DNA from: Ramazzottius varieornatus
Taxonomy: Eukaryota; Animalia; Tardigrada
Length of the DNA stretch: 64,000 nucleotides
Assembly (NCBI GenBank): GCA_001949185.1
Contig: BDGG01000003.1
Coordinates: forward strand, 1,524,725-1,588,724
Direction of reading: 5' to 3'
A model generated the notes under the pieces. It saw only the letters and a program-made list of their open reading frames with translations. It did no database searches and was not told the origin of the DNA. The position numbers and the translations under genes were made by a program. Positions 1 through 14,675 of the stretch are shown here, one piece after another; the first letter of the stretch is position 1; every line of letters starts with the position of its first letter.

Positions 1-416
1 GGGAAGTGCTACAAGGAAATTAATCATGGTAAATGTTTTTTAGAGCACGTAGAGCAGGTTTTCGAAGTCGAGATCGACAAAGGCCAGTTCATGGCGAGGA
101 TGAATAGCAAATTATATCGCCTTCGAAACAAACTGCGGAAACAGTCGACGGATGATCCATCAATCTTCCCAATTTAGGTTTTTCGTTAACCTTTTATAAG
201 AACGAAGTTGATTGTTGGTTTTCGACACTTACTGCTCGGTACTTTGAGCCCGTGACACTGTATTCGGGGCTTCGGCAAAATGAAACAACATCATCACAGA
301 CGTACACAACCATATATTCCCATTCTGTCAATGTTGATTAATCCGCGGTGTCTTCCGAAAATGGCTGAGACGACTCTTCTACAACTTGCTTCAGTGGGTG
401 TTCATGGTTGAACTTG

Positions 417-965
417 TTATATGGCGCATTCAACCTCGTATAATACTCGGCAACATCTTGGGTGATCAGGTCCATCCAGTCTGTCTTTTAGATCCTTGAA
501 TGTCGCACTGGCCGTTTCTGCGCTCAAGACCCAGCAGTCCCCCATCAGATCATACCTGGAAATACGTGACGATACGACACTCTTGCACTCAAAGGAATTT
601 TGGCGCGATCGACAAGACTTACAGATCGGTCGAGCAGTATTCAGGTTCCGCCAAGCGCAGTCCTCTCTGCAAGATTTCCTGCACGAACGTGTCGACATTT
701 TCTGCAATCTTTCGCTGTCCATAAGGAATCTTACCCAGCGAGAACATTTCCATAACAAGATCCCGTAGGACCAAACATCGCTACTCTCGTTGAAAGTCGA
801 ACTGAGGAATGCGCTGGGCGACATCCATGGGATGGGCAGCGCAATGCGAACCAGAATGTTCCGCGCTGCCAGATCTCGGTGCACAGTGGGTCGAGAAGCC
901 AACAATGGGTCGAGAATACCGCGAGCTACGTGGTACGCGAAGTTCATCAGGTCCTTCGTTGACAG
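417..965 (-). pseudogene. Receptor tyrosine kinase catalytic-domain relic (PVR/FGFR-like)
   Basis: Reads KDLMNFAYHVARG..VHRDLAARNILV directly followed by LPIPWMSP..SDVWSYGILLW. The DFG/activation segment is missing, there is a frameshift after ILLW, and no N-lobe is seen. Confidence 0.75.
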
Positions 966-1324: not shown

Positions 1325-4300
1325 ATGGACGGCGAACATGGAGTCGACGAGCACTGTGCTGAATCGGTTTACAGTTCGCCGTTATCGCTGGACTTCCGAC
1401 GGCTGTGCCTTATCTTGGATCCGACGGAATCAAAGACGCCATCCTCCTGGCACAACATCGTCGACAGAAAAGCCCGCACAGTCACATTCTTGCAAGCCGA
1501 TTTTGACCTTACTAAGCCATTCGTATCAAGGTGTGTTCGCCTTTCCTGTAACACATCTGCTGGTCATCATGAGATGCTGGAACCCATCGTACTTCTCGAC
1601 GACCAGGAGCAGCCGACCTCTTTTGTGCGTTCAATCTTGGGGAGAAGCCATATTGACTCTGTGGAGGAGCTGACTACGCTTCTCAAGGCTGTTGAGACTG
1701 TGGATGTGTTCTCAGGCACTGACGAAATAGTCAGGAACGCAGTGGACGACTTTGATGCCAGGTATGAACGCGCTGAACAGAATATCGTGTGTAGCGTTTC
1801 GTGGAAGTGTGACGTCAGTGTAGAGTACGCCTTGTCGTTCGGTTCTGTGGGTCAGTTTGACCGAAGTTGTGACGTCGTAGGATCCACTGTGCCGATTAAC
1901 GTGTGCTTGTCTCTAGTTGTAGGCTTCAGTTGGATCCTGCAGTGCGGAAGCTGTTTGCTGCTTTGGATAAAGACAAATACCCATCGAAGAATCCATCAAC
2001 AGTAAAACATTCAACGAACACAGACTACATGAATTATCTGTCACCACGTAAGAAGACCTCTCGTAGAGCTAGGGAATGGGCCTGTGCGCAACAAGTGGAC
2101 GAACCTGAGACACCTGCTCAACCTTCCCCAGCCATCTCCGAGGAACCTGCTGATGTCGAGCCGGTATCCGAAGAACCTGAGATCTACACGATAAATGAAA
2201 GTGACGACGACGATTGGTTGCCTCCTGGGAAGAGAAAAAGTGATGGGTCAGCTGTGATGCGAGGATCTCCGCTCGCTGCGAGGTTGTCGAGAAACAGTAA
2301 GTTCGGTCATATCAATATCAGTACGTTTTTCGTCCATTTATATCGCACAATGTTGTTTAGTTTCAGGCTATCAGGAGAAGAAACTGCCAGCATTGCTGCC
2401 GAAAAGAAACCCAAATTTACCGACAGGGAGGTTCGATAAGGTCGGCGTTCCCGAACAGCCCAGTGTGCGCGTCTCGTTTCCGCGGACTACCCCTTCCCCT
2501 ACCCAAAAGCCCAGCTCAGTACCAACCAAACATGTAAAATATGGTATCAGCTCCGTGTTTGCTTCAATCCGAATGCGTCACACCTTTTCGAACGTCGTCG
2601 CTGATAAGCTTGTGGGTAAAAGTAATTCCCCAGAAGACTCAGCGAGGCTCAATCAGGCACTTCGTGGACCCATCGCGAGCTCTATTCAGAGCATACCAAA
2701 ACCACACAAGGTGCCTGTCGGTACGAGTGTGACTGTATCCGTGACGGACATTCTGGCGCAGATGCCGTCGGTAGCGACAGTGGCTGGAACCGGTGCGGGT
2801 ATTGCGAGTTGATGGAGAAGTGCTACTGGAACACTCCCGGAGAAGGACAGATGCTCCTCATGCCAGGATCTCACATCCATATATACGCCTCAGTCCTCGA
2901 GGACCTGAAAAGCCGATACGGTCCCGCGAGGGAGCGGAAGGGTTAGAAATACCACCATCATTTGTTTCATCATCTCGCTGGTGGTTGGGACAAAGTCGTT
3001 AGATTCAAGAAGGAACTTATAGGGGTCGATTGGATACTGGGTCGAAAGTTCCTTGACGCTTTAGCAGGTATAACTCATTTCAATAATATTACACTGTGTG
3101 TTGTATTTTCAGCCGTAGCTGTTTTTGTTGTTTGTTGGTGTACCATAACAGTCAACAGCCAGAATTTGAAGATCTAAGATATTGGGTAAGATACTCGTAC
3201 TCGTATTGCGTGTTTGATGGGAGACTGTTCTTAGATCATGTGGACGCCTTGTTCACCAGCAAGATGAACAGAGCCGAAACCAGGAGAATATTGAACAGAT
3301 CCTTGCTGACATCTCAACGAGAAATGAAACCTGGAAAACGCAAGAGAGAGTCCACATCTGTGGGGAAGACCCGGAGCACGCATCAGACGGACGCGGAAGT
3401 GAGCGTAGACGATGATGAGGCTCAGCACGGTCCGCACAAGGAAGCCTCAGGCGTCTGACGACGGGCTCACAGAAGACTCTGAAGTTATCGCAAAGAGAAA
3501 AGGTATATGCGGTAACTTCTGTCTCGGTTTGGTGTTTAGAACGCTAACTGGTTTCATAACTGCGAGTTTTGAAGGGTTTTTGTCGACTTGCTACTGGACT
3601 ACACCAGGGGATGGTAAAGTTCAGCTGTGTCCTGGTTTTGATGTCTATGTCTACCAGCAAAGCTTGACAGATTTCCGGCAGCAGTTCGGTCCTCTTGGCG
3701 CTCGTGGGGCTGCGTCGGCTTCTTGCTGGAGTAAATACTCCGCCACTCTGCTTGCATACCTCAGTGGGGGATGGGACGTTGTCATCAAGGACAGAAGGCC
3801 ATCGCAGGGACACAGGGCCATACTAGGTCCCGATGTCTTTCGAGCTGTGGCAGGTGGGCTGAGAGCTACAGTTTTATGACCATACGTTGCTGTTGATGCT
3901 CTCTTCTCGCACAGTGTGATGTTGTTTTGTGCTTTTCGCTGTTTGCTACGGGCATTTTATTTTTGTAAAACTTTTTCAGGCCACATCAAAGAGCTGTTCG
4001 GCGTCGAGAATGACATGGAGCATCCTGTTAACAGAGTGCGTTTGGCCTGGAGCAACTCCGTGTCACAAGTGAGGCCCAAGACCAAATCCTGCCTTGCCGA
4101 CTCTCACGCAGAGAAGAGCCAAGTGTTTTCAGGTGCGTTTGAAATTTTCAGTACGCGAATCAGGACACCCAAGTGGACGTTTCACTGGTCTTTCCAACAC
4201 AGAATATTTGGCGACCTGTTACTGGAAGACGCCAGGTGCAGACAAAATTCCCCTGCACCCGGGCTTTGAAATCTATGTCTACCCGGCAATCCTGGAAGAC

Positions 4301-5484
4301 CTCAAAACTCACTACGGACCCGGAACACCCCATTACGGCAAGGATGGGTGGGGTAGATATGCGTCTCGTCTATTCGTAAACCTCGTCGGTGGATGGGACA
4401 ACCTGATGAAGTATGAACGGCCCAACGTTAGCATCGGTAGAATGATGGAGGGCGACTTTTTCTACGCTATGCTTGGTATGAATTCCACTTTTTCAGTGTA
4501 CACGCAGTAAGAGAAAGTGCGAAGACACGCCTTGCTGACTGCTGTCTAACTTGCCCTTTAGGGCATTTGCGCGAGCTCTTCAAAACCAAGATGACAAAGC
4601 GAGAGTTTGCGGCGACGTTGGAGGGCATCTTTATGCATTTCCGCCGGTACCAATACCTTCCCGAACCACGGGCTGAAGCTGAGACCGAAGCTCAAGTTGA
4701 TGATTGCCGCCAACCTGAGACTCAACGTAGACAGTCTGTCGCGAATACCGAACCTGCCAACGTTTCCCCGAACAAAGGGAGCGCGCTCTCTCTTTTAGAA
4801 CCCATTGGTAAGAGCTAAATTATAGTATTACTGAGCAGGGGTAAAAACTTAAGTGTAGGAAATGACAGGAAAAGTTTCACGTTATAGGTATGTACGAAGG
4901 ACCATGCGGAGACCGGGGTGGGGGTTAGGACAAGTATTATTGGTCATCTCCGGCCGATGATAGGGTACCTGGTGCCCCGGATACGGAATCTATGTGTACC
5001 GGAGAGTTCTCGAGGAGCTTGTGAAGGAGTTCGGCCCCAAACATTATGGTAAAACCCAGTGGAAGCGGTATGCGTTTCGTCTTCTGAATCACCTTATTGG
5101 CGGCTGGCAGAGCTTTCTGAAAGACATGCCTGTAGCTATCCGTAGAACGAATAGCACGATAAGTTTATGGAAGGTTCTAGGGTTGGATTTCGGCCGCGCC
5201 CTATCAGGTATTGACACAACGAAAATTATTACACGTCCACGACTATTGGTGACAGCTACAGTGGTGCTCAATGAATATTATGGGTTTTTGCAGAACATAT
5301 CCAAACGGTTTTTGATATCGAGCTCGCGAGGAGCGAGGTTGTCGCGCAACTGAATTTCAGGTTGCATCAAAAACTTGGGAGCATGCGAAAGAAAGGGAAG
5401 AAACAGAAGAACATTGCGCTAGAGGATGCTCATTCACCGGAAGATAGTGAGGAGAGGAGCGGTCTTCCGAGTGTGGTGGCGTAA
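1325..5484 (+). pseudogene. Paralog A: unassigned N-terminal domain + 4 BEN-like repeats; probably disabled
   Basis: Exon 1 1325-1761. Repeats (YW.TPG..K.PL.PG..YVY...L....GP...W..Y...L...L.GGW) start at ~2812, 3575, 4203 and 4930. In-frame TAG at 2944-2946, 1-nt frameshift near 4970, stop at 5482-5484. Confidence 0.7.
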
Positions 5485-6052
5485 AACGAGAATTCCATTT
5501 TTGGTCCAGCTGTTGGACTCTGACCATCTTTTACCGTCGTTTCTTTTGCTCCACTGAGTAACATTGTAGGAACTCGTCTTTTCCGAACCTCGGTGGATTT
5601 TAGACCGAACGCATCAACCTTTGCTCAATTGTCAATACAGTATTGTCCTAATAATGTTGATTCTACTGGAATTATCGGTTATTTGATAGAACTGTAGATT
5701 TCACGTGCCTTAACAGACTAGCCTTCAGTCCTTCACCGTACTACATGATATGTATTGCTCGAACTGGCTGGATGTTTTCGTAACAACGTCCGAATGCATG
5801 CGGAAGTCCCACGCCATTTGGAGTCAGGACGGTGGTCAGTGACATTGCCAGAAAACTGGTCCAGTGATGAGTGATCGACTGAAACTGCTGGCCTGCGCTG
5901 AATGTCTGATCGGTCTCTTTTTTTCTATACTGCATAGTGCTTACTGCTTAGCGCTTACTGCTGCGCATACATCCAGAATCTGACATCCATGCTTATCTTC
6001 TTGTATCATTCAAGAGTAAGCCCAATATTTTACGTCCACTGATCGCCAGAAG

Positions 6053-7957
6053 ATGGAGGATGGATACGGTAGCCATGAGCGCGTTGATGATACAGCAGAC
6101 GGACCGTCATCTTCGTTTGACTTTAACCATGTTTGCAAGCTGCTAGATCCGAAAGACACCCCAACGAAACTATGGCATCGAATCATCGACAAAGTGGCAC
6201 GCGTCATTCTGTTCTACCAAGTGGAATACGAGTTCACAAAGCCGAAGATATCCCGATGTATTCGCCTTACCGTAGCCCTGACGAGAGACGGAACGAACAG
6301 CCTGTGCACAGTGGTGAAGCCAACAGTGTTCCTGAACGATCGTGAGCTACCTGTCTCCTTCGTCGAGTCTAAAATCCATCGGCATTACCTCAAATCCGCC
6401 GATGAACTGACGGGGCTTATCAATGCAGTGGAAGTTGAACCCGTGGAAGCCTACACGGACGAGCTGGACAGCCAACCGGACAGCAGGTGCGAAGTTTAAA
6501 ATTCATAGCTTACTAAATAAGCGGCGCATAGCGTCATGGAATTTGCGTTTGATGCTGCTGTATTATCTGACACCATGCGCGAATCGCCAGGGTGCGTCTC
6601 TTGATGCAGCATTGTGGTGTCAGTAACTTCGTGTGAATTTCCAGACTTGAGCCGGACCCGGCAGCTGAAAAGCTACAAGCCATCCTTCGAAGAACAAAGA
6701 ATCAATCCATTCGTGCCATCGCCGCAAGAGCTGCAGGGAAGGTGGATGGCCAAAACTCGCCGGTACAGCGGAGAAAGAATTCGCGCAGAGTCAAAGAACT
6801 ATCATGCGCGCAGCCAGCATCTGTTGACGAGCCGCAAGCCGCTTTGCCCCAGATCAGCGACGAACATAGTGAAGAGTCTCAGATTGCCACACCGAAAGTC
6901 ATACTGGCCACACCAACGACCGAACGCAGGATCCGGCCGAAACCGTCCGCGGGAACGAGAAAGTCTGGTGATGTCGAACGTGTCAGGCTGAGCCGGTTAA
7001 CTGACTCGGGTATTAAGTCAGTCTTCCAGACTGCGATGTCCTCCGTGAGACTCAAGGCAGCTTCTCCTCCTGAAACTTATACCCGTAAGCTTGTCTTTTT
7101 CTTGGATGACTGTCGCGTAAGACGACTATTAATCATTTTTTTAGGTTCCTTGAGACCGAGTACCCTGAAGAAGACCCAGAAGAAAGGCACGAACGAGGAC
7201 TCTGATGTCGAATCTGACACTGACAGTCCTCCATCATACTCTAGGAAAGGCAGTCCGGAACTGTATGGACCAGCCTACAAGAAAAGTAAGTTATGACACT
7301 CGAGACTGAAAGCTCGGGAGCTCGGCAAATAAACTTGACCAGATCGCTTTCCCAAGTGGCGCACGGTTCTAGCCAGTATCACCGAAATCTTGCGTCATTT
7401 GGGAAAACGATCTGGTAGAATTTGTTTGCCGAGCTCCCTAGTATGATTTGCTTTACTTTCAAAGATTCCCTGTAAGCCGAACGAAAAGTCTGTCGAACCA
7501 ACGCTTTCTTCTCGTGTTTAGAAAAGGTAGCGAAGTACAGTTGGTCGACTCCCAGCCAAGGCAGGGTTCCTCTTCATAGTGGGCATGACGTCTACATCCA
7601 TCATAATACGCTCCAAACGCTATCGAAGCGATGCGATCTTACAAAGACAAAGGAGTGGCCCAAATACGCGTTTCTCCTGCTTGAGCACCTCAGCGGGGGA
7701 TGGGCCGACTATTTTAAGAGAAAGAGCATAGGACCCGAAACTAAGTTCGGAATAGTACAAGCGTTTGGAGACGACTTGTGTGAGGCTCTAGTTGGTATGG
7801 AACTTATCATGAATGCCGGACTCTCTGGAATTCATCAATATGTAAAGAGTCTCGTTTTACAGGACATGTGGAGAAGGTCTTTCAAGCTCTGATTCCAAAG
7901 AGCGTGTTTGTGGATACTATGAACTCTGCGATAGCTGAGTACCGCGCGAACCCGTAA
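6053..7957 (+). CDS. Paralog B: unassigned N-terminal domain + 1 BEN-like domain
   Basis: FDFNHVCKLLDPKDTPTKLWHRIIDK; exon 2 starts RLEPDPAAEKLQAIL; BEN-like exon ~7522-7794 (KYSWSTPSQGRVPLHSGHDVYI..WPKYAFLLLEHLSGGW); last exon 7863-7957. Confidence 0.8.
7316..7438. mobile_element. 123-bp palindromic MITE-like element (family X), best-preserved copy
   Basis: GGGAGCTCGGCAAA...TTTGCCGAGCTCCC termini; inner CCCAAGTGGCGCAC-N25-TTGCGTCATTTGGG; intronic. Confidence 0.8.
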
Positions 7958-8116
7958 AACACATCGAAAGCTTGATAAATGAATATGCGGAACTAATGGA
8001 AGTACAAACGACAGATGTTTCTTATCCGAATTCCTAAACTCTAAATAATTGCCCCATTATCGAGAGCTTGACATGTTAGAGGATATATAAGAAAGAGCGA
8101 ATCGAGCACGAGAGTT

Positions 8117-8530
8117 TCACCTGGTGCTCCAGCGGGCTAGAGCGTCGAACATTTCTCGAGTCAGTTTCTTGTCTGCGTCCCACAGCTGCTCAACCTGGCC
8201 AGATTCTTTCAGAGCTTTCACTTTTACAGTGACATAGTGAAGCGCAGCAGTTTTCAAAACAGGTGCCGCGACCTTGTCAGCGAGTAAGACTGTGTCAGCC
8301 AACCGGAATGAGTATCAGTAGACGTGGACGGTCGCGGTTTCCGGAAGGTTGGGCACATAGAGATGTTCCAACCTGACGTTCCGATGACGGTTCTTTCCGA
8401 CCGCAGCAAAGAATGCTTCATCTTCAGAGCTGAGAAATTGGGAATAGTCCAGTCGATGGTGAGCTTGATATGTTCGTCAAAACATGAGACAGTCTCCGTT
8501 TTAGCCATCGCGGCGGAAACAGCCATCGTG
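8117..8530 (-). pseudogene. SPOP/roadkill-like MATH-BTB relic with internal deletion
   Basis: MATH start (LTIDWTIPNFSALK..GWNISMCP) is joined out of frame to a BACK-like tail (ADTVLLADKVAAPVLKTAALHYV..LTREMFDALA). The BTB core is absent. Confidence 0.65.
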
Positions 8531-8971
8531 CAGTAATCAGGGCAACACTTGTCGACAAGCAACAGCAAGAACGGTGATTTTTCGACGGAGTGGATCTGCG
8601 AAGAGCTGGAAGCAACGAGCAGAGGACCGTGCCGGATTCTCCCGCGCTGTTGGAGATCGAAATGCAAACTGTGGACATACGGCACAATGGCAGTAGGTCG
8701 ACTGACCAATGGTCAGCCGTGGCGGAACCATACAGCCCGCCAGACTCGAACTAACTGGCTCAGCGGGATACGGGTCACTCCTAGGGTTTAGACAACCCAA
8801 AGGGTTGCAGTAGTAGACACTTTGCAGCTGGCTTGATTCTTGATTGCCGAGCTCGCTGAAACAAAATGAATTTTCATTTTGATAATTTCGAGAACGGGGC
8901 AAAGTACTCCTGCCACTTCTGGTTCCAGTTTTGATTCTGCCATTGCTGTAACGACGCTACCTCGCGAAAAG

Positions 8972-11900
8972 ATGAACGATGAATCTGAGAGCGACGACTA
9001 CATGGATGGACTCGTCAACGAGTCTCCCAAACGGATCAGCTTCGACTATCTCTGCAGACTACTGGATCCCAAACAGTCAGAAACGCCGTTGTGGTACAAA
9101 ATCATCGACAGGACTGCTGGCATCCTACTCTTCTTCCAGATCGACTACGAGTCTCGCAAGCCTACAGTATCGAGATGCGTTCGCCTCACCAGAGAGAATT
9201 TGTCCAACTTGCGCGAGTTCTTGGAGGTAGCCATATTCCTTAATGGTCGTGAGTTGTCCCCTTCCGTTGTGGTGTCTCTTCTTGGTCGGAGTTACATTAA
9301 CACAACGGAAGAACTGACAAAAGTCCTTGATGAGTTCGAATCCGTGGACCTCTCGGAGCTCGTTGAGGACGATGAAGACAATACATTCGATGAATCCAGC
9401 AGCAGGTGCGAAAAAATGCAGACTCAATAGCATATAGATACCATGACGTCATGTGCGTCTTTCGTGGTAATGACTACGATCGCATTTCATTGTATAGCTA
9501 TCGTGACGTCGTGCATCGACTCGATCGAAAGTTAGTTAAAATTGTTTTACAGCGTTTCGATGTTTTAGGCTACAGTCGGATCCCGCGGTTCGGAAATTAA
9601 GAGCTGTTCTTGGAGAAGCTTCGACCGTTCAGCCAGCGTTATCAAAAAATGTCTCGAACAACCACGGAGACGACAGTCAGTCTGCACAGCGGAAGAATGA
9701 TCGTCGTGGTCTGAGAGAGCCTTCGCCGAAGCAACAGGTGGAAACGGACCAAACGGTTATTCCGGAGCTGGATATCCCGGACGTCGCTCTAGGTCTACCA
9801 CAGCTTAGCGATGACGAGGACGATAGGTATTCCGACAGGGGAAGTGTTGGAGCGCCTGCCCACGTGGGAGCAGAAACTTCCATAACGCAAGAGTCGTTGA
9901 AGCCACTGCTGTTTCCGGTCAAGAGGAAGCAAGATGAGACTGCAGTCAACGCTCCTCCCGAGCTGAATCTGGGAGTCGTGCAAGCGCTCATACCTTTACC
10001 GATCCTTTCAGCAGCTTCCGTGCTCCTGGACGTCGAAGAAACCTGTCCGGAACCTTCGCGGAACATGTCCAAAGCGAATAGTGAGCAAATCGGTGAGCAA
10101 TTTCTTTTTTTTATTTGAGTTATCTGATAATATCCGAATATAATTCTTAGTTCCTTCCGAAACGTACTACTGGAGTGCTCCGGGTGAGAACAAAGTACCT
10201 CTGCATCCAGGCTTCCTGATCTACGTTTATCGGAATATCCTGGAGGACCTCAAAGACCAGTTTGGTCCTGGAAAGCGAAGTCACTGGTCGAAATACGCGC
10301 ATCGCCTGGCTGTTCATCTTTTAGGTGGATGGGGGAAGATTCTCAAGAACGACAAGTGCCGGAATGGCTTTGAAGCAATGCTGGGAAGCGAATTCTTCAA
10401 AGCTCTGGCAGGTATAAAACTGACTACAGCTCGGCGGAGTAAATTGCGCTTGTATTGCATAGACCAGCGTACTCGTCGGTACATCGAATATACCGTATCA
10501 GTGTATGCAGGTCCAGTTGAACGCCCGCAATTTGTCATCCGAACTCCCTTTTTTGTCATTTCGTTTCCGGAATATCAGTCATTTATTTTATCATGTAGGA
10601 CATGTCCATCAGCTGTTCAGTACAGAAGTAACTAAAGAAGAGCTCCTGAAGAGGTTGGACAAGACTCTGAAGACATGTTTAGAAAGACATACAATCCGGA
10701 AACCTGCGCGTCCGAGACCGAAACCGAACCCGCCTTCTGCTTCTCCCATAGTAATGCTGAAAGCGGTCCCTGATAAACCGGTACATCCTACGACCAAAAG
10801 AAGGAGTACATCTCCCGTACCCTGCAAAGTGGTCCACGAGAAACCCACGCGAAGTCTACGTTCGCCGACTAAACGGATCTTTTCATACGACGTTGAACAA
10901 GACACACATAATTCTGACCGCGATCCCGAATATGATCCTGATCACTCCAGCGACGACGGCTCTGAAAATTCATACGAACCTGTCAAATCCAAGGTTCCTC
11001 GAAGCGCTAAAAAAACACATCAAACAAAGCGAGTCGCACCTCCAGTGGCCATTCATCTCGATCCCGAAGTGCGTCACTCTAAAGAGGCTTCAGCGGAACC
11101 TACAGAGAAAACCTCAACCAAGAGAAGTAGATTTGTTCTTTAACCCATTCTGTCTTTTGTTACTTCTGCCTAACGTTCTTTTAAATTCGCAGAGAAGTAC
11201 TACTGGATGAATCCAGGTGATGACACAGTGCCTGTTCGCGCCGGGTACAACGTTCATGTGTACCGCGGTATCCTCGAAGACCTGCAAAGTCAATACGGAC
11301 CTGGAAAAAATCCGTGGTACACCTACGCCCAAAAGTTGATCGTCCATCTCATCGGCGGGTGGGAGAACTACATCAGCGATACGGGCGTCATTCGAAGTCC
11401 TCTGTTCGACAAATATCTTGGCTCCGCATTTTGTCTGGCCATAATCGGTGCGTCTCTTACAGTATGTTTGCTTGTTGCTTTCGTTCATGTATATCTTTTC
11501 TGTTTTAGGCCATGTCCAGGAATTTTTCAACGTGAAGATCACGAAAGAAAATCTTTTGACGAAGCTGGCAGGCTCCGTCAGTACCTGCCGACAGAAAATG
11601 AAGCGACATCAGCTGAAGAGGCAAGGGGCCAAAAACCAAGTGATGGAACTCTTGGATATTAGCGAAACAACAGATGAAGCTCACAATGAACATTTAGCAA
11701 AGGATTATGACGCGGGTAATTTAACCGGAAAGTCCGACACGATGGTAGATTAAATTCCGACCTAGGCCAACCAACTCGACAAGATCGCGTATTCCCGTGG
11801 CGCATGACCACAGGTAATGACACCGGAAACGTGCGCCACTTGGGAAAAGGAGTTTATCGAGTTTGCTTGCCGAGCTCACCAGTTGTCTGAAGACTAAGGT

Positions 11901-12372
11901 TCCTTCCTCAGGTTACCCCGTACAGAGGTACGAGGGGGAGTGTCTGGAGAAATATTACTGGTCAATTCCCGGGGACGACAAAGTACCGTTGTGTCCCGGG
12001 TATAACGTCTACGTCAACGAGAAAATCCTTGAAGAGATCGGAAAGCTTTTTGGTCCCCCAAAGACTGACTGGAGTAGGTACATGCATCGCCTGATCAAAC
12101 ACCTTCTGGGTGGCTGGGAGAACTTCCTCAAAGACAAGAAGCCTGGAACAGGCCTGGTCTCCTCACTGGGGGACGACTTTTTTGTGGCGTTGGCAGGTAG
12201 ATTGCGGTGTCTTGGTTTCCGCAATTGGCACTGGTGACGAATGTGTGTTGCAGGTCATCTGCGAGAGCTCTTCAGGATTACAGTCACCAGGAACCTCGTG
12301 GTCGAGAAACTGAAGGGTTCCATGGCGCAGTATCAGCGCAAAATGCGGCTCAAGGAAAAAGCGCCATCCTAA
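8972..12372 (+). CDS. Paralog C: unassigned N-terminal domain + 3 BEN-like repeats
   Basis: ISFDYLCRLLDPKQSETPLWYKIIDR; exon 2 RLQSDPAVRKLRAVL; repeat exons ~10151-10411, 11193-11447 and 11911-12196, each completed by a GH(V/L)..LF exon; TAA at 12370-12372. Confidence 0.8.
11757..11879. mobile_element. Family X palindromic element
   Basis: GTGGCGCAT(11797)-N25-GTGCGCCAC(11831), ending TTGCCGAGCTC; lies in the intron before the last BEN exon of paralog C. Confidence 0.75.
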
Positions 12373-12854
12373 TGTTCAGTTCTTCGCAGGCACAATCTTG
12401 TGAGCTTCTTTTCATTGTTCGTCTGTCTTTGCGCCAGCCGCTAGTACGTAGGACTACTCTGAAAAATAACGGTTGCTTTTTCTCTTTGCAATGATGTTAC
12501 GATGACTCATGAAAGCGGCTGTGCTTCTGATACACGTAATGTTTCAACATGAAGTGAAGACAACTTTCTGGTATCAGCGTATACAGTAAACTGACTAAAG
12601 CTGCTCTCGCAAAACAATTAGGACTTGAGAAGGGAATTATGATTTCTGACAGACCCGGACCGTCATGGACGTCACCTCGGTGACCTCGCTCTCCGTACCC
12701 GCGGGGCCGCTGGGCTGGTGTTCACGCTGAACTTTGAACTTGAATTCTGATTCTTTGGCATTAGAACTTAGAATCACGCACGACTCTAGAGCTTCGTTTT
12801 CTAGGTGGAACTACAGTATATGAGTGCGAAACCTCGCATTCGACGATCGGGCAG

Positions 12855-14675
12855 ATGACTGACGGGTACGAGAGTGAAGAATGGGCCGCCGAACGGACAA
12901 ACGGGGAACCGAAACCTTCAGCAGTGGACTTCAGTCATCTTTGCAGAGTGCTGGATCCGACGGAATCAGAAACGACGTTATGGCACAAGATTGTCGATCG
13001 TAAAACCCACATAGTCCTGTTCTTCCAAGTACAATATCTATCCTGCAAGCCAAGAATATCCAAGTCCGTGCAAATTACGCGTGGAAAGCTACCTGGCATT
13101 CGAGAGGTGCTCAAGCCAGTAGTTTACCTTGGCGACCACGAGTTACCTGCCTCCTTTGTCGAATCCACCTTCGGACGCTGTTACCTCCTTTCGCTCGATG
13201 AAATCTCTGAACTACTCAAGTTGGTCGAATGCGCGGATGTGTCGCAGTTTGAGGACCAAGATGGAGACGGTGGCTCCGGGCAGTCGCGCAGCAAGTAAGT
13301 CGAAATAGTTTTTGGCTACCATTTGGACCAAGTTCGCAGTGAATAACACGTGATGTCATATTATTCGAGGAGGCGTAGCAAAGTATATTGCCAAGGGGGA
13401 GTATAATAATCATGACGTTACTTTGCCGTGACGTCGACGTCTGTATTTGGTATTGTGTCACACAAAACAATGACGTGTCCAGAACGCAAAAATTAATAGT
13501 TTCCCCATGATTTCCCAGGTTTGAATTGGACCCAGCTGCACAACGACTGACCGCTATTCTGTCACAGCCAAGTGATGCGTCGAGCTCTGTCAGAAAAAGA
13601 GCTACAAAGAGAGCTGGAAGCTCGTCTGACTACCGGTCCAGCGACGATGGTTTCGGCATGCTTCCGCAGACCAGCGACGGGGAGGAATTTCTCGACGAAA
13701 AGTCGGTCCAATCTGAAGCACAGGAAGAGGGCGATGGAGACAAGTTCGAAGTCATTCCGCAGCTCCAGTCAAAGCAGAGGTTCGATTATGTCCGATCCAA
13801 ACGTGGGAAAAGTGCGCTGAGGAAAATCACTGACAAGAAGAGACCCCGGATAGGAGAAGTCAAACTACCTTTCTCGAAGAATCCACCTGCTGACCTCTTC
13901 GTACTATCCTCGAGTTTTCTGAGTGAGTAAAGCTTTTGGGAGTTGAACGAGTGACATGAAGCACATCGTTTCCGCCAGTCGCGCACGGTCCACGCTAAGA
14001 GCAACGAGAACGTGCGCCACTTGAGGTGACGACTTGGTTCGTCTCCTTTGTCTAGCTCTCACATCACGATGAGGTAGTGAGTGTGGCTGTTTCGTGAAAA
14101 CCAGATGTGATACTTGCAGAAGGCGGAACGAACTACTGGACGCAGCCCGGAGAAGGTCGGATACAATTACGTCCGGGCTACGATGTTTATGTTCACCAGA
14201 ACGTACGAGGAGTCCTTTTTATTTCGTACATTTTCTTCTCATCTTAGTCTACTAGTTTTCTTTTTAGGTGCTGGAAGACTTGAAATCGTGTTATGGTCCA
14301 CAGAAGAAAAAGTGGAGTGTATACGCCACGCATTTGGTTGGGCATCTGATCGGTGGTTACGATAGCTACTTCCGGACGAAAAAGCCCAAGGAGGGGGTCG
14401 CTCAAGCTCTGGGCCACGATGCCTTGAACGCGCTTTGCGGTATGAATATCCACGCTCTAGAAAATATTACCTGTTAAACCATACACGTACAATACTTGGT
14501 TTCAGGTCACGTTACTGAAGTCTTCAATCGGGAGATATGCAAATCAGACATCCTCAGGGTAGGGAACAGAGCTCTCTCGGGCCGTGCGGGTAGGTCTCGC
14601 ACGGTGCAAATCCAGGAAACAAGAGAACCCGAAGATCGCTCTGCTGAAAACCATGAAGAGCCCGACGAGACATGA
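12855..14675 (+). CDS. Paralog D: unassigned N-terminal domain + 1 BEN-like domain
   Basis: VDFSHLCRVLDPTESETTLWHKIVDRK; exon 2 FELDPAAQRLTAIL; NYWTQPGEGRIQLRPGYDVYVHQN|VLEDLKSCYGP..WSVYATHLVGHLIGGY; TGA at 14673-14675. Confidence 0.8.
13938..14060. mobile_element. Family X palindromic element (degenerate)
   Basis: GGGAGTTG...GTCGCGCAC(13978)-N25-GTGCGCCAC...AGCTCTC, 123 bp; lies in the intron before the BEN exon of paralog D. Confidence 0.7.

What the first reader, a model, noticed from the sequence alone, without database searches (positions are those of the whole stretch)
1325..14675. Tandem family of four genes: unassigned N-terminal domain + variable-number divergent BEN-like domains (4/1/3/1)
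Seen: four same-strand paralogs share a ~120-aa N-domain (F..LC..LDP......W..I.D+....F.Q......P.+S+C+.+...P.+.L...E.P.SFV....R.Y+....EL..L+..+E), a DPA..KL.AIL helix and a low-complexity linker with basic patches. They carry nine copies in total of a ~105-aa module (YW..PG..K+PL.PG..+YV...LE.L...+GP...W..YA..L+..L.GGW......LG.+F..AL.GH+..+F). Known: BEN domains (e.g. NAC1 KLELVTGTNVYI..L..LLRRLL..LD..LHAV) have the same hairpin-then-helices layout, and BEN proteins (Insensitive, Elba, BANP, BEND3) are sequence-specific DNA binders and insulators. Inference: this is a lineage-specific, rapidly diversifying family of modular DNA readers with a signature YWxxPG/GGW variant that I do not recognise from described BEN proteins.
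Basis: partly seen in the sequence, partly recalled or inferred. Interest (0 to 1): 0.85.

Follow-up and report, generated by a model that had tools for sequence, protein, structure and literature searches.

The report
Tardigrade-specific divergent BEN-domain gene cluster
Four neighbouring genes of the tardigrade Ramazzottius varieornatus each join an orphan N-terminal domain to one to four copies of a very divergent BEN DNA-binding fold; they belong to a large unnamed tardigrade-only family, and one of the four is broken in the reference strain.

Summary
The window is Ramazzottius varieornatus contig 3. It carries four same-strand paralogs, each built as N-domain, DPA helix, disordered charged linker, then 4, 1, 3 or 1 two-exon modules. 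A fifth member (RvY_06952, four modules) ends at window 1-174.

The BEN reading is supported by fold, not by sequence. An AlphaFold2 model of gene 2 (RvY_06955) gives a module at pLDDT about 96. Its three best matches among 48,161 PDB chains are BEN domains: BANP Z 9.0, NACC1 Z 9.0, Bsg25A Z 8.6. The nearest ESM Atlas clusters are BEN too. The Pfam BEN model never hits.

The module profile finds 31 proteins in 1.84 billion; every named one checked is from a tardigrade (3 species). The genome holds at least 45 module copies. The N-domain is an orphan alpha/beta domain, RWD-like at best (Z about 7).

Genes 1 and 2 are transcribed and spliced. Gene 1 is a transcribed pseudogene in the reference strain: a 1-nt loss, a TAG at the conserved Trp and a 2-nt loss, all absent from a 1-2% divergent strain.

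The module core is under purifying selection (dN/dS about 0.13). The helix-5 exon diverges about twice as fast. DNA binding is inferred, not shown.

Other first-stage notes of this scan flag BEN-like families elsewhere in this genome; none is marked as checked.

The parts
1..174 (+). Last exon (exon B of module 4) of the upstream cluster member RvY_06952 (P0001, 1172 aa, four modules).
1325..5484 (+). Gene 1: N-domain, linker and four BEN-like modules. It is a transcribed pseudogene in the reference strain. GenBank model RvY_06954 (P0002) covers only M2 and M3.
1325..1730 (+). Gene 1 N-domain (end approximate).
2361..3067 (+). Gene 1 exon holding the end of the linker and M1 exon A (about 2815-3067). 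The linker frame stops at 2810; the divergent strain has +C after 2804. The TAG at 2944-2946 replaces the conserved Trp (TGG in the divergent strain).
3235..3502 (+). Gene 1 M1 exon B plus linker. The frame breaks near 3448; the divergent strain has +AG there.
3575..3853 (+). Gene 1 M2 exon A.
3980..4132 (+). Gene 1 M2 exon B.
4203..4475 (+). Gene 1 M3 exon A.
4562..4807 (+). Gene 1 M3 exon B plus linker.
4888..5207 (+). Gene 1 M4 exon A, with an in-frame TAG at 4926-4928 and a 1-nt frameshift in the C-run near 4968-4975. The frameshift is also present in the divergent strain, which shows no indel there.
5294..5484 (+). Gene 1 M4 exon B and stop.
6053..7957 (+). Gene 2 = RvY_06955 (P0006, 460 aa). 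Exons are 6053-6486 (N-domain), 6645-7084 and 7145-7285 (DPA helix and disordered linker), 7522-7794 (module exon A) and 7863-7957 (exon B). All four introns are seen as GT..AG joints in four runs.
8972..12372 (+). Gene 3 = RvY_06957-1 (P0032, 870 aa; isoform -2 = P0003, 587 aa, retains the intron after 11125). N-domain is 8972-~9406 and linker ~9570-10091. M1 is 10150-10413 / 10600-11125, M2 is ~11192-11443 / 11508-11717, M3 is ~11911-12196 / 12253-12372. Exon ends are read from frames, not from reads.
12855..14675 (+). Gene 4. N-domain is 12855-~13280 and DPA helix plus linker ~13520-13905. Module exon A is split 14118-14202 | 14267-14445; exon B is ~14505-14675. No protein model was recovered and no reads were laid on it.
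7313..7441 (.). Palindromic MITE-like dispersed repeat in the intron before the module of gene 2. Related copies lie at 11826-11887 (gene 3) and about 13960-14030 (gene 4). It is not part of the protein family.

Best explanation
This is a tandem cluster of the tardigrade Ramazzottius varieornatus. Four genes lie in the finding; six N-domain genes lie in the wider cluster on this contig. The proteins are very probably nuclear.

Shown: each protein has an orphan alpha/beta N-terminal domain, then a short helix (DPA..+L.A.L), then a 150-300-residue disordered linker with basic and acidic patches, then one to four copies of a ~115-residue module. The module has the BEN fold: an N-terminal beta-hairpin packed on a five-helix bundle. 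Genes 1 and 2 are transcribed and spliced. The family is restricted to tardigrades as far as sequence searches can see.

Inferred: each module binds DNA as solved BEN domains do, by placing its C-terminal helix 5 in the major groove. Helix 5 is encoded by exon B, is the most variable part and is net basic. The conserved YW..PG / GP / W.KYA / HL.GGW / LG..F..ALAG-H..+F residues would then form the hydrophobic core. Arrays of modules with fixed positional identity would read composite sites, or would divide labour between DNA binding and protein binding. The N-domain would recruit partners or mediate oligomerisation. The basic patches in the linker would serve as nuclear localisation signals.

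History: a two-exon module flanked by phase-1 introns was amplified to four copies, and the whole gene was then duplicated (gene 1 versus RvY_06952). Both copies stayed under purifying selection. Gene 1 decayed only recently, in the reference strain's lineage.
For: Identity of the genome and gene models.

Architecture.

AlphaFold2 model of RvY_06955: N-domain pLDDT about 90, linker below 50, module about 96, with strands 353-355 and 363-365 followed by helices 366-375, 381-395, 399-405, 416-436 and 442-458.

[quoted passage not shown] Rank 2 is NACC1 BEN bound to DNA (Z 9.0). Rank 3 is Bsg25A BEN bound to DNA (Z 8.6, rmsd 2.6). BEND3 BD1 (Z 6.9) and BEND6 BEN (Z 6.5) are also in the top eight. 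The next unrelated match to the module scores 6.2.

ESM Atlas: the nearest named clusters by features carry PF10523 (score 0.92, 192-193 of 256 features shared). By structure, the nearest are BEN (TM 0.70), 'putative BEN domain-containing' (0.70) and NAC1 (0.68).

Exon B, which encodes helix 5, is net positive in 9 of 10 modules and more variable than exon A (2.14 against 1.46 bits). Its dN is 0.48 against 0.26 for exon A.

Spliced contigs from four studies cover all introns laid of gene 1 (from 2001 on) and all four of gene 2.

Restriction to tardigrades: 31 hits in 1.84 billion proteins; the 14 of the 20 clusters looked up that carry a name are all Ramazzottius, Hypsibius or Paramacrobiotus.

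The N-domain plus module architecture is conserved in Hypsibius exemplaris and Paramacrobiotus metropolitanus (hhalign E 1.9e-17 and 1.8e-13).

Module tree: g1 M1-M4 pair one-to-one with RvY_06952 M1-M4, with support 97-100.
Against: The Pfam BEN HMM does not hit any module, whole protein or genomic exon at E <= 1. Homology to BEN therefore rests on fold and language-model features only.

Foldseek against the PDB listed no BEN entry among its 50 best rows.

For mostly helical models, Z about 9 lies in the range the tool warns can reflect a common arrangement.

DNA binding, nuclear localisation and any role of the N-domain are untested. Helix 5 of gene 2's single module is not basic (net 0). 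At least one solved BEN domain (BEND3 BD1, 5jno) was solved bound to a protein partner (PICH) rather than to DNA.
Confidence: 0.65

Rival explanations
1. The modules have the BEN fold but act as protein-protein adaptors rather than DNA readers, as BEND3 BD1 binds the PICH TPR domain. The proteins would then be scaffolds.
For: BEND3 BD1 in complex with PICH (5jno_A) is among the structural matches, at Z 6.9. Helix 5 of gene 2's module is not basic. Some exon-A cores are neutral or acidic.
Against: The three best matches are BEN domains solved with DNA. Nine of ten helix-5 regions are net positive. The linkers carry basic patches typical of nuclear proteins. One Paramacrobiotus member has a weak, sub-threshold match to a C2H2-type finger model.
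Confidence: 0.2
2. The cluster is transposon- or virus-derived selfish DNA, since BEN domains occur in viral and mobile-element proteins, rather than host regulatory genes.
For: The genes are tandemly amplified. MITE-like palindromes sit in three of the introns. Another first-stage note in this genome reports a BEN domain next to a transposase-like module (unchecked).
Against: No transposase, integrase or viral domain was found in any member. The genes are multi-exon and spliced. The architecture is conserved in three species of two superfamilies. Old paralogs show dN/dS of about 0.13. The palindrome is a genome-wide repeat with 645 candidate copies, not specific to this family.
Confidence: 0.07
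3. The resemblance to BEN is only a generic small helical bundle, and the module is an unrelated tardigrade invention.
For: There is no sequence-level link. Z is about 9 for a mostly helical domain. Foldseek found nothing at E <= 0.001.
Against: Five different BEN entries are in the top eight of 48,161 chains, with full-domain coverage including the beta-hairpin. Language-model features, which do not use my model, and the ESM Atlas's own structure also point to BEN. The tool counts its two searches as one source.
Confidence: 0.06

Closest known systems
BANP / NACC1 (NAC1) / Drosophila Bsg25A (Elba1) BEN domains (PDB 7yuk, 8yzs, 4x0g)
   Same: Same fold: an N-terminal beta-hairpin plus a five-helix bundle of about 100-115 residues, superposed over 90-102 residues at Z 8.6-9.0. 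The C-terminal helix is basic in most copies.
   Different: Only 10-15% identity in the structural alignment. The Pfam BEN model does not detect the modules. Their own signature (YWxxPG, W.KYA, HL.GGW, ALAG-H..+F) is not seen in the described BEN proteins I could compare. A phase-1 intron splits every module before helix 5.
BEND3 (four BEN domains) and other multi-BEN proteins
   Same: Arrays of up to four BEN domains in one protein, separated by disordered linkers. The individual positions are not interchangeable; here positional orthology is conserved between paralogs and between species.
   Different: No sequence similarity. A different N-terminal part. Restricted to tardigrades. The copy number varies (1, 3 or 4) among neighbouring paralogs.
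BTB-BEN proteins (NAC1/NACC2, mod(mdg4) isoform)
   Same: The same logic: an N-terminal globular protein-interaction domain, a disordered linker and C-terminal BEN. A BTB-containing arthropod cluster and NAC1 are among the nearest ESM Atlas structures.
   Different: The N-domain here is not BTB. It is an orphan alpha-beta4-alpha2 domain whose best structural matches are Med17 C-terminal and kinetochore or classical RWD domains at Z 5-7. No Pfam or Atlas relative was found.
RWD / UBC-like alpha+beta domains (Ctf19/CENP-P, Spc24/25, RNF25 RWD, Med17 C-terminal domain)
   Same: The same order of secondary-structure elements: helix, four-stranded antiparallel sheet, two helices. Foldseek's best hit is Ctf19 (E 0.013, probability 1.0).
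   Different: Z never reaches 8. There is no sequence similarity. The homodimer prediction gave no verdict.

Membership tests
BEN domain (Pfam PF10523 / InterPro IPR018379) | Matches the family's profile HMM above its gathering score (23.2 bits). | tested here: not met
   There is no PF10523 hit at E <= 1 for exon translations, at E <= 0.1 for ten family proteins or at E <= 1 for nine more. A six-frame scan of the whole genome gave one unrelated 17.7-bit match on contig 4.
BEN domain (Pfam PF10523 / InterPro IPR018379) | [quoted passage not shown] | tested here: met
   The AF2 module has pLDDT about 96 and exactly this element order. Ranks 1-3 of 48,161 PDB chains are BEN domains at Z 9.0, 9.0 and 8.6, and two more BEN entries are in the top eight. 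The ESM Atlas structure rows give BEN and NAC1 at TM 0.68-0.70.
BEN domain (Pfam PF10523 / InterPro IPR018379) | Sequence-derived features nearest to BEN families. | tested here: met
   In the ESM Atlas feature search, the top named clusters carry PF10523, with score 0.92 and 192-193 of 256 features shared. Nineteen of 30 hits share that family set. The tool's caveat is that this was not calibrated for parts of proteins.
BEN domain (Pfam PF10523 / InterPro IPR018379) | A positively charged C-terminal helix 5 that can enter the major groove. | tested here: inconclusive
   The helix-5 region (exon B) has net charge +2 to +7 in nine of ten modules and 0 in gene 2's module. No electrostatic surface or DNA docking was computed.
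BEN domain (Pfam PF10523 / InterPro IPR018379) | Sequence-specific DNA binding. | not testable with these tools
   This needs EMSA, PBM or DAP-seq.
RWD-like domain (for the N-domain) | Alpha-beta4-alpha2 sandwich superposable on RWD or UBC-like domains with a clear score. | tested here: inconclusive
   The topology fits. The best Z values are 7.1 (Med17 C-terminal), 6.1 (KMN junction), 5.8 (Ctf19) and 5.3-5.4 (RNF25 and C21orf6 RWD). These lie within the range the tool calls a common arrangement. The Atlas search was blank.

The most novel reading that the evidence does not exclude
Tardigrades may have built a large private superfamily of BEN-derived chromatin proteins. It has at least 45 modules and roughly 20 loci in R. 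varieornatus, is invisible to Pfam, and is partnered with an orphan N-domain. Part of this family may belong to the tardigrade DNA-damage or anhydrobiosis response. In the source data of eLife 2024 (PMC11233135), the Paramacrobiotus fairbanksi homologue of BV898_17718 (N-domain plus one module) is flagged tardigrade-specific and is induced by ionising radiation (log2FC 2.36, padj 9e-36). The window's genes could then be regulators or DNA-associated effectors of stress tolerance rather than ordinary developmental transcription factors.
Probability: 0.12. Interest if true: 0.75.

Novelty: new variant of a known kind. Interest (0 to 1): 0.5.

Why it matters
In the protein records I looked up, every named family member is called only 'hypothetical' or 'uncharacterized' protein. 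Recognising the modules as BEN folds turns dozens of orphan tardigrade genes into candidate sequence-specific chromatin or transcription factors. It also gives concrete constructs for DAP-seq or PBM.

The case shows how far a DNA-binding domain can drift beyond profile-HMM detection while keeping its fold. It also documents module amplification by symmetric (phase-1) exon pairs.

The orphan N-domain is conserved across Parachela and is a new, confidently folded domain without a clear relative. The strain-specific decay of gene 1 is a natural knockout that could be used to look for a phenotype.

Tried and rejected
- Pfam on exon translations and on 19 family proteins gave nothing relevant.
- The PDB sequence search with the exon-A profile gave chance hits only.
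- Foldseek against the PDB listed no BEN row among its top 50 and no hit at E <= 0.001.
- Foldseek against BFVD viral models was uninformative.
- The search for homologous proteins on the N-domain region found only the query itself, because of the word prefilter and the length window.
- The homodimer prediction for N-domain plus DPA helix (residues 18-178, two copies) scored 0.00, which is no verdict either way.
- Literature searches by 'tardigrade' plus 'BEN domain' and by locus tags found no paper on the family. The supplement of PMC9145152 has no entry for these genes.
- The idea that the intron palindrome is the family's own binding site was rejected. It is a dispersed repeat with 645 candidate copies genome-wide.
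- The weak PF10523 hit on contig 4 (L012) showed no recognisable BEN ORF.
Coordinates were then derived from frame tables instead.
- Joined steps were left out. I did not splice the exons of genes 1 and 4 into joined proteins. Full-length analyses used only GenBank models returned by the search tools (P0001, P0002, P0006, P0032). Window-only modules entered alignments and the tree as single-exon pieces.
Full report
**Where we are.** The window is G000 contig 3, positions 1524725-1588724, of a 55.8-Mb genome in 200 contigs. Proteins retrieved with the module profile are GenBank entries of Ramazzottius varieornatus: RvY_06952, RvY_06954, RvY_06955 and RvY_06957-1/-2, all named 'hypothetical protein'. 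The genes have short GT..AG introns.

**Check of the observation.** Stop-to-stop frame tables, the ORF list and alignments confirm four same-strand paralogs.
- Each starts with an N-domain of about 120 aa, 36-46% identical to the others.
- Each continues, after an intron, with a 'DPA..+L.A.L' helix and a long charged, low-complexity linker.
- Each ends with 4, 1, 3 or 1 modules.
- Every module has two exons. Exon A runs from YW..PG to ..ALAG. Exon B starts H+..+F and encodes a further helix.
- The intron between them is phase 1, inside the Gly codon.
- The exon-A profile (A1) scores the nine copies at E 1e-19 to 3e-38 in the genome search.

- (a) The cluster is larger. A fifth member with four modules (RvY_06952, 1172 aa) ends at window 1-174. 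A sixth N-domain gene lies further upstream.
- (b) The genome holds at least 11 N-domain copies and at least 45 exon-A copies on more than nine contigs.
- (c) N-domain genes on contig 1 end in a still more divergent module that lacks YW and GGW (hhalign E 0.0016 over 77 columns).
- (d) A member on contig 3 near 3.44 Mb has a divergent N-domain, a linker with repeated Cys/His motifs, and at least three modules.

**Gene 1 is broken in the reference strain.**
- The linker frame stops at 2810, just before M1, which lies in another frame.
- The conserved Trp codon of M1 is TAG (2944-2946).
- The frame breaks again near 3448.
- An in-frame TAG lies at 4926-4928.
- M4 has a 1-nt frameshift in a C-run near 4970.
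- GenBank accordingly annotates only a 360-aa remnant, covering M2 and M3 (P0002).

Contigs of four public runs from four studies were laid on 2001-8000. A contig of the 2016 run is identical to the reference, TAG included. A run whose contigs differ from the reference by 1-2% throughout has G at 2945 (TGG, Trp), an extra C after 2804 and an extra AG after 3448. By frame arithmetic, each of these changes restores continuity between the conserved frames. That run shows no indel at the M4 frameshift.

So at least three lesions are specific to the reference strain's lineage. M4 appears disabled in both strains. Whether TAG 4926 is changed in the divergent strain was not listed.

**Transcription.** The same contigs join all predicted exons of genes 1 and 2 across GT..AG introns.
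- Eight joints fall in gene 1 and four in gene 2.
- The gene 2 joints appear in all four runs and match model P0006 exactly.
- The run kinds are only guessed to be RNA, but spliced contigs cannot come from genomic DNA.
Gene 3 has two GenBank isoform models; no model was recovered for gene 4.

**Fold of the module.** I aligned RvY_06955 (P0006) with 27 family sequences (A3) and predicted its structure with AlphaFold2.
- The N-domain has pLDDT about 90, the linker below 50, and the module (345-460) about 96.
- The module has a beta-hairpin (353-355 and 363-365) followed by helices 366-375, 381-395, 399-405, 416-436 and 442-458.

An all-against-all structural search of 48,161 PDB representatives ranked these first:
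- BANP BEN bound to DNA (7yuk_A): Z 9.0, rmsd 3.3, 101 of 116 residues, model 347-460.
- NACC1 BEN bound to DNA (8yzs_A): Z 9.0.
- Bsg25A/Elba1 BEN bound to DNA (4x0g_A): Z 8.6, rmsd 2.6.
- BEND3 BD1 (Z 6.9) and BEND6 BEN (Z 6.5) are also in the top eight.
- The next non-BEN match to the module scores 6.2.

[quoted passage not shown] It states that all solved BEN domains insert helix 5 into the major groove (PMC10206803).

Independently of my model, the ESM Atlas puts the module nearest to clusters carrying PF10523 by language-model features (0.92, 192-193 of 256 shared). By its own predicted structure it puts the module nearest to BEN, 'putative BEN domain-containing' and NAC1 clusters (TM 0.68-0.70).

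Against this, the Pfam BEN HMM never hits, and Foldseek listed no BEN chain in its top 50. My conclusion is that the module has the BEN fold and is very likely a far-diverged BEN domain. By the Pfam criterion it is not a member.

**Fold of the N-domain.**
- Alone, with an 11-row alignment (A4), it folds at pLDDT 77.5 into helix, four strands, two helices.
- The best structural matches are the Med17 C-terminal domain (Z 6.9-7.1), kinetochore RWD domains (KMN junction 6.1, Ctf19 5.8, Spc24/25 5.3) and classical RWD domains (5.3-5.4).
- Foldseek's best PDB hit is Ctf19 (E 0.013).
- All of this lies within the range the tool calls a common arrangement. The Atlas search gave nothing.
- I therefore call it an orphan domain with RWD-like topology.
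- It is present, followed by modules, in Hypsibius exemplaris BV898_17718 (hhalign E 1.9e-17) and in Paramacrobiotus metropolitanus LOC129594334 (E 1.8e-13). The architecture therefore predates the split of Hypsibioidea and Macrobiotoidea.
- A homodimer prediction gave no verdict.

**Distribution.**
- hmmsearch of the exon-A profile against 1.84 billion representative proteins found 31 proteins at E <= 0.001.
- I looked up 20 of those clusters. The 14 that carry a name are all R. varieornatus, H. exemplaris or P. metropolitanus. The other six are unnamed ENA or Logan assemblies.

**Evolution.** An IQ-TREE tree of 32 modules pairs gene 1's M1-M4 one-to-one with M1-M4 of RvY_06952, with support 97/98, 98/99, 100/100 and 99/93. 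The four-module array therefore existed before the gene was duplicated. Positional pairs also link R. varieornatus and H. exemplaris modules in another subfamily.

| Region compared (gene 1 vs RvY_06952, Nei-Gojobori) | Codons | dN | dS | dN/dS |
|---|---|---|---|---|
| Exon A (module core) | 325 | 0.26 | about 1.9 (saturated) | about 0.13 |
| Exon B (end of helix 4 plus helix 5) | 131 | 0.48 | about 1.0 | about 0.46 |

The exon B estimate is noisy, and the M1 alignment there is weak.

- Exon B is also more variable across the ten copies (2.14 against 1.46 bits) and is net positive in nine of ten.
- The core is thus conserved and the putative recognition helix evolves about twice as fast.
- That fits diversification of specificity but is not evidence of positive selection. 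'Rapidly diversifying' is too strong.

**Mechanism.**
- Shown: the BEN fold, the domain order, splicing, and purifying selection.
- Inferred: DNA binding through helix 5; nuclear localisation through the basic patches in the linkers; multi-module reading of composite sites, or a division of labour among positions; partner recruitment or oligomerisation through the N-domain.
- The main rival is that some or all modules bind proteins, as BEND3 BD1 does.

**Literature.**
- No paper links tardigrades to this family.
- The 2017 comparative-genomics supplement lists a single InterPro BEN orthogroup with one gene per species. Canonical BEN is therefore nearly absent, while this divergent family is large.
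- In the source data of the 2024 eLife radiation study, the P. fairbanksi homologue of BV898_17718 is tagged tardigrade-specific and is induced by ionising radiation (log2FC 2.36, padj 9e-36). Its R. varieornatus best hit is RvY_18390 on another contig, not a gene of this window. This is a lead for the family only.

**Related notes of this scan.** Several first-stage notes flag BEN-like repeat genes elsewhere in this genome, and two cover the upstream genes. None is marked as checked. One sibling note (s1-795203) proposes that the intron palindrome is the family's binding site. I found that it is a dispersed repeat with 645 candidate copies genome-wide, which argues against that reading.

**Limits.**
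Spliced models for genes 1 and 4 were left out, and full-length work used only database proteins.
- Contigs cannot give expression levels.
- The module was searched as part of a 460-residue model, and both structure-prediction jobs are spent.

**Verdict.** This is a new, strongly diverged, tardigrade-restricted variant of a known DNA-binding domain family, combined with an orphan N-domain. One of the four genes is a recently decayed, still transcribed pseudogene in the reference strain.

Noticed in passing
window 7313-7441; also 11826-11887 and about 13960-14030: A palindromic element of about 125 bp (arms 56 nt, 82% complementary) sits in the intron before a module exon in genes 2, 3 and 4. 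It is a dispersed MITE-like repeat: 645 first-look candidates genome-wide, and the 40 scored are 69-83% identical on many contigs. A family-specific binding site is therefore unlikely (this bears on note s1-795203).
   Followed up: yes
window 2001-8000, run X10: One public run labelled with the same organism differs from the reference by 1-2% at many sites in genes 1 and 2. It carries the intact states at three lesion sites of gene 1. A second strain or population therefore exists in public data.
   Followed up: partly
window 5291-6483: A 5768-nt contig of run X1 runs without a break from the last exon of gene 1 through the intergenic region into gene 2. This could be read-through transcription or an assembly merger; contigs cannot tell which.
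   Followed up: no
L008:1438-2583:+ and L009:784-1980:- (G000 contig 1, about 4.93 Mb and 6.59 Mb): Single-exon ORFs of 381 and 398 aa combine the same N-domain with a C-terminal module variant (PGPGK..L ... YL.K..D.L.G ... LL.E.FL..L) that lacks the YW and GGW signature. hhalign against the exon-A profile gives E 0.0016.
   Followed up: partly
L013:3250-5503:- (G000 contig 3, about 3.44 Mb): Another family member has a divergent N-domain. Its long linker holds three copies of a Cys/His motif (C-x7-C-x4-H-x-C), which may bind zinc. At least three modules follow.
   Followed up: no
P0027 (Paramacrobiotus metropolitanus LOC129594334), residues 424-488: After its N-domain and module, this homologue has a weak match to a C2H2-type finger model (PF17017, E 2e-4, below the cut-off).
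   Followed up: no
PMC11233135, supplementary file 13: The Paramacrobiotus fairbanksi gene rb_79889, whose best H. exemplaris hit is BV898_17718 (N-domain plus one module), is flagged tardigrade-specific and is induced by ionising radiation (log2FC 2.36, padj 9e-36). Its R. varieornatus best hit is RvY_18390 on another contig.
   Followed up: partly
window 417-947 (-): An ORF of 176 aa looks to me like part of a protein tyrosine kinase catalytic domain, probably an exon of a neighbouring gene. No search was run on it.
   Followed up: no
G000 contig 3, 1512240-1512599 (L003): The most upstream N-domain gene of the cluster has no exon-A profile match between it and the next gene. It may carry no module or only a very divergent one.
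   Followed up: no
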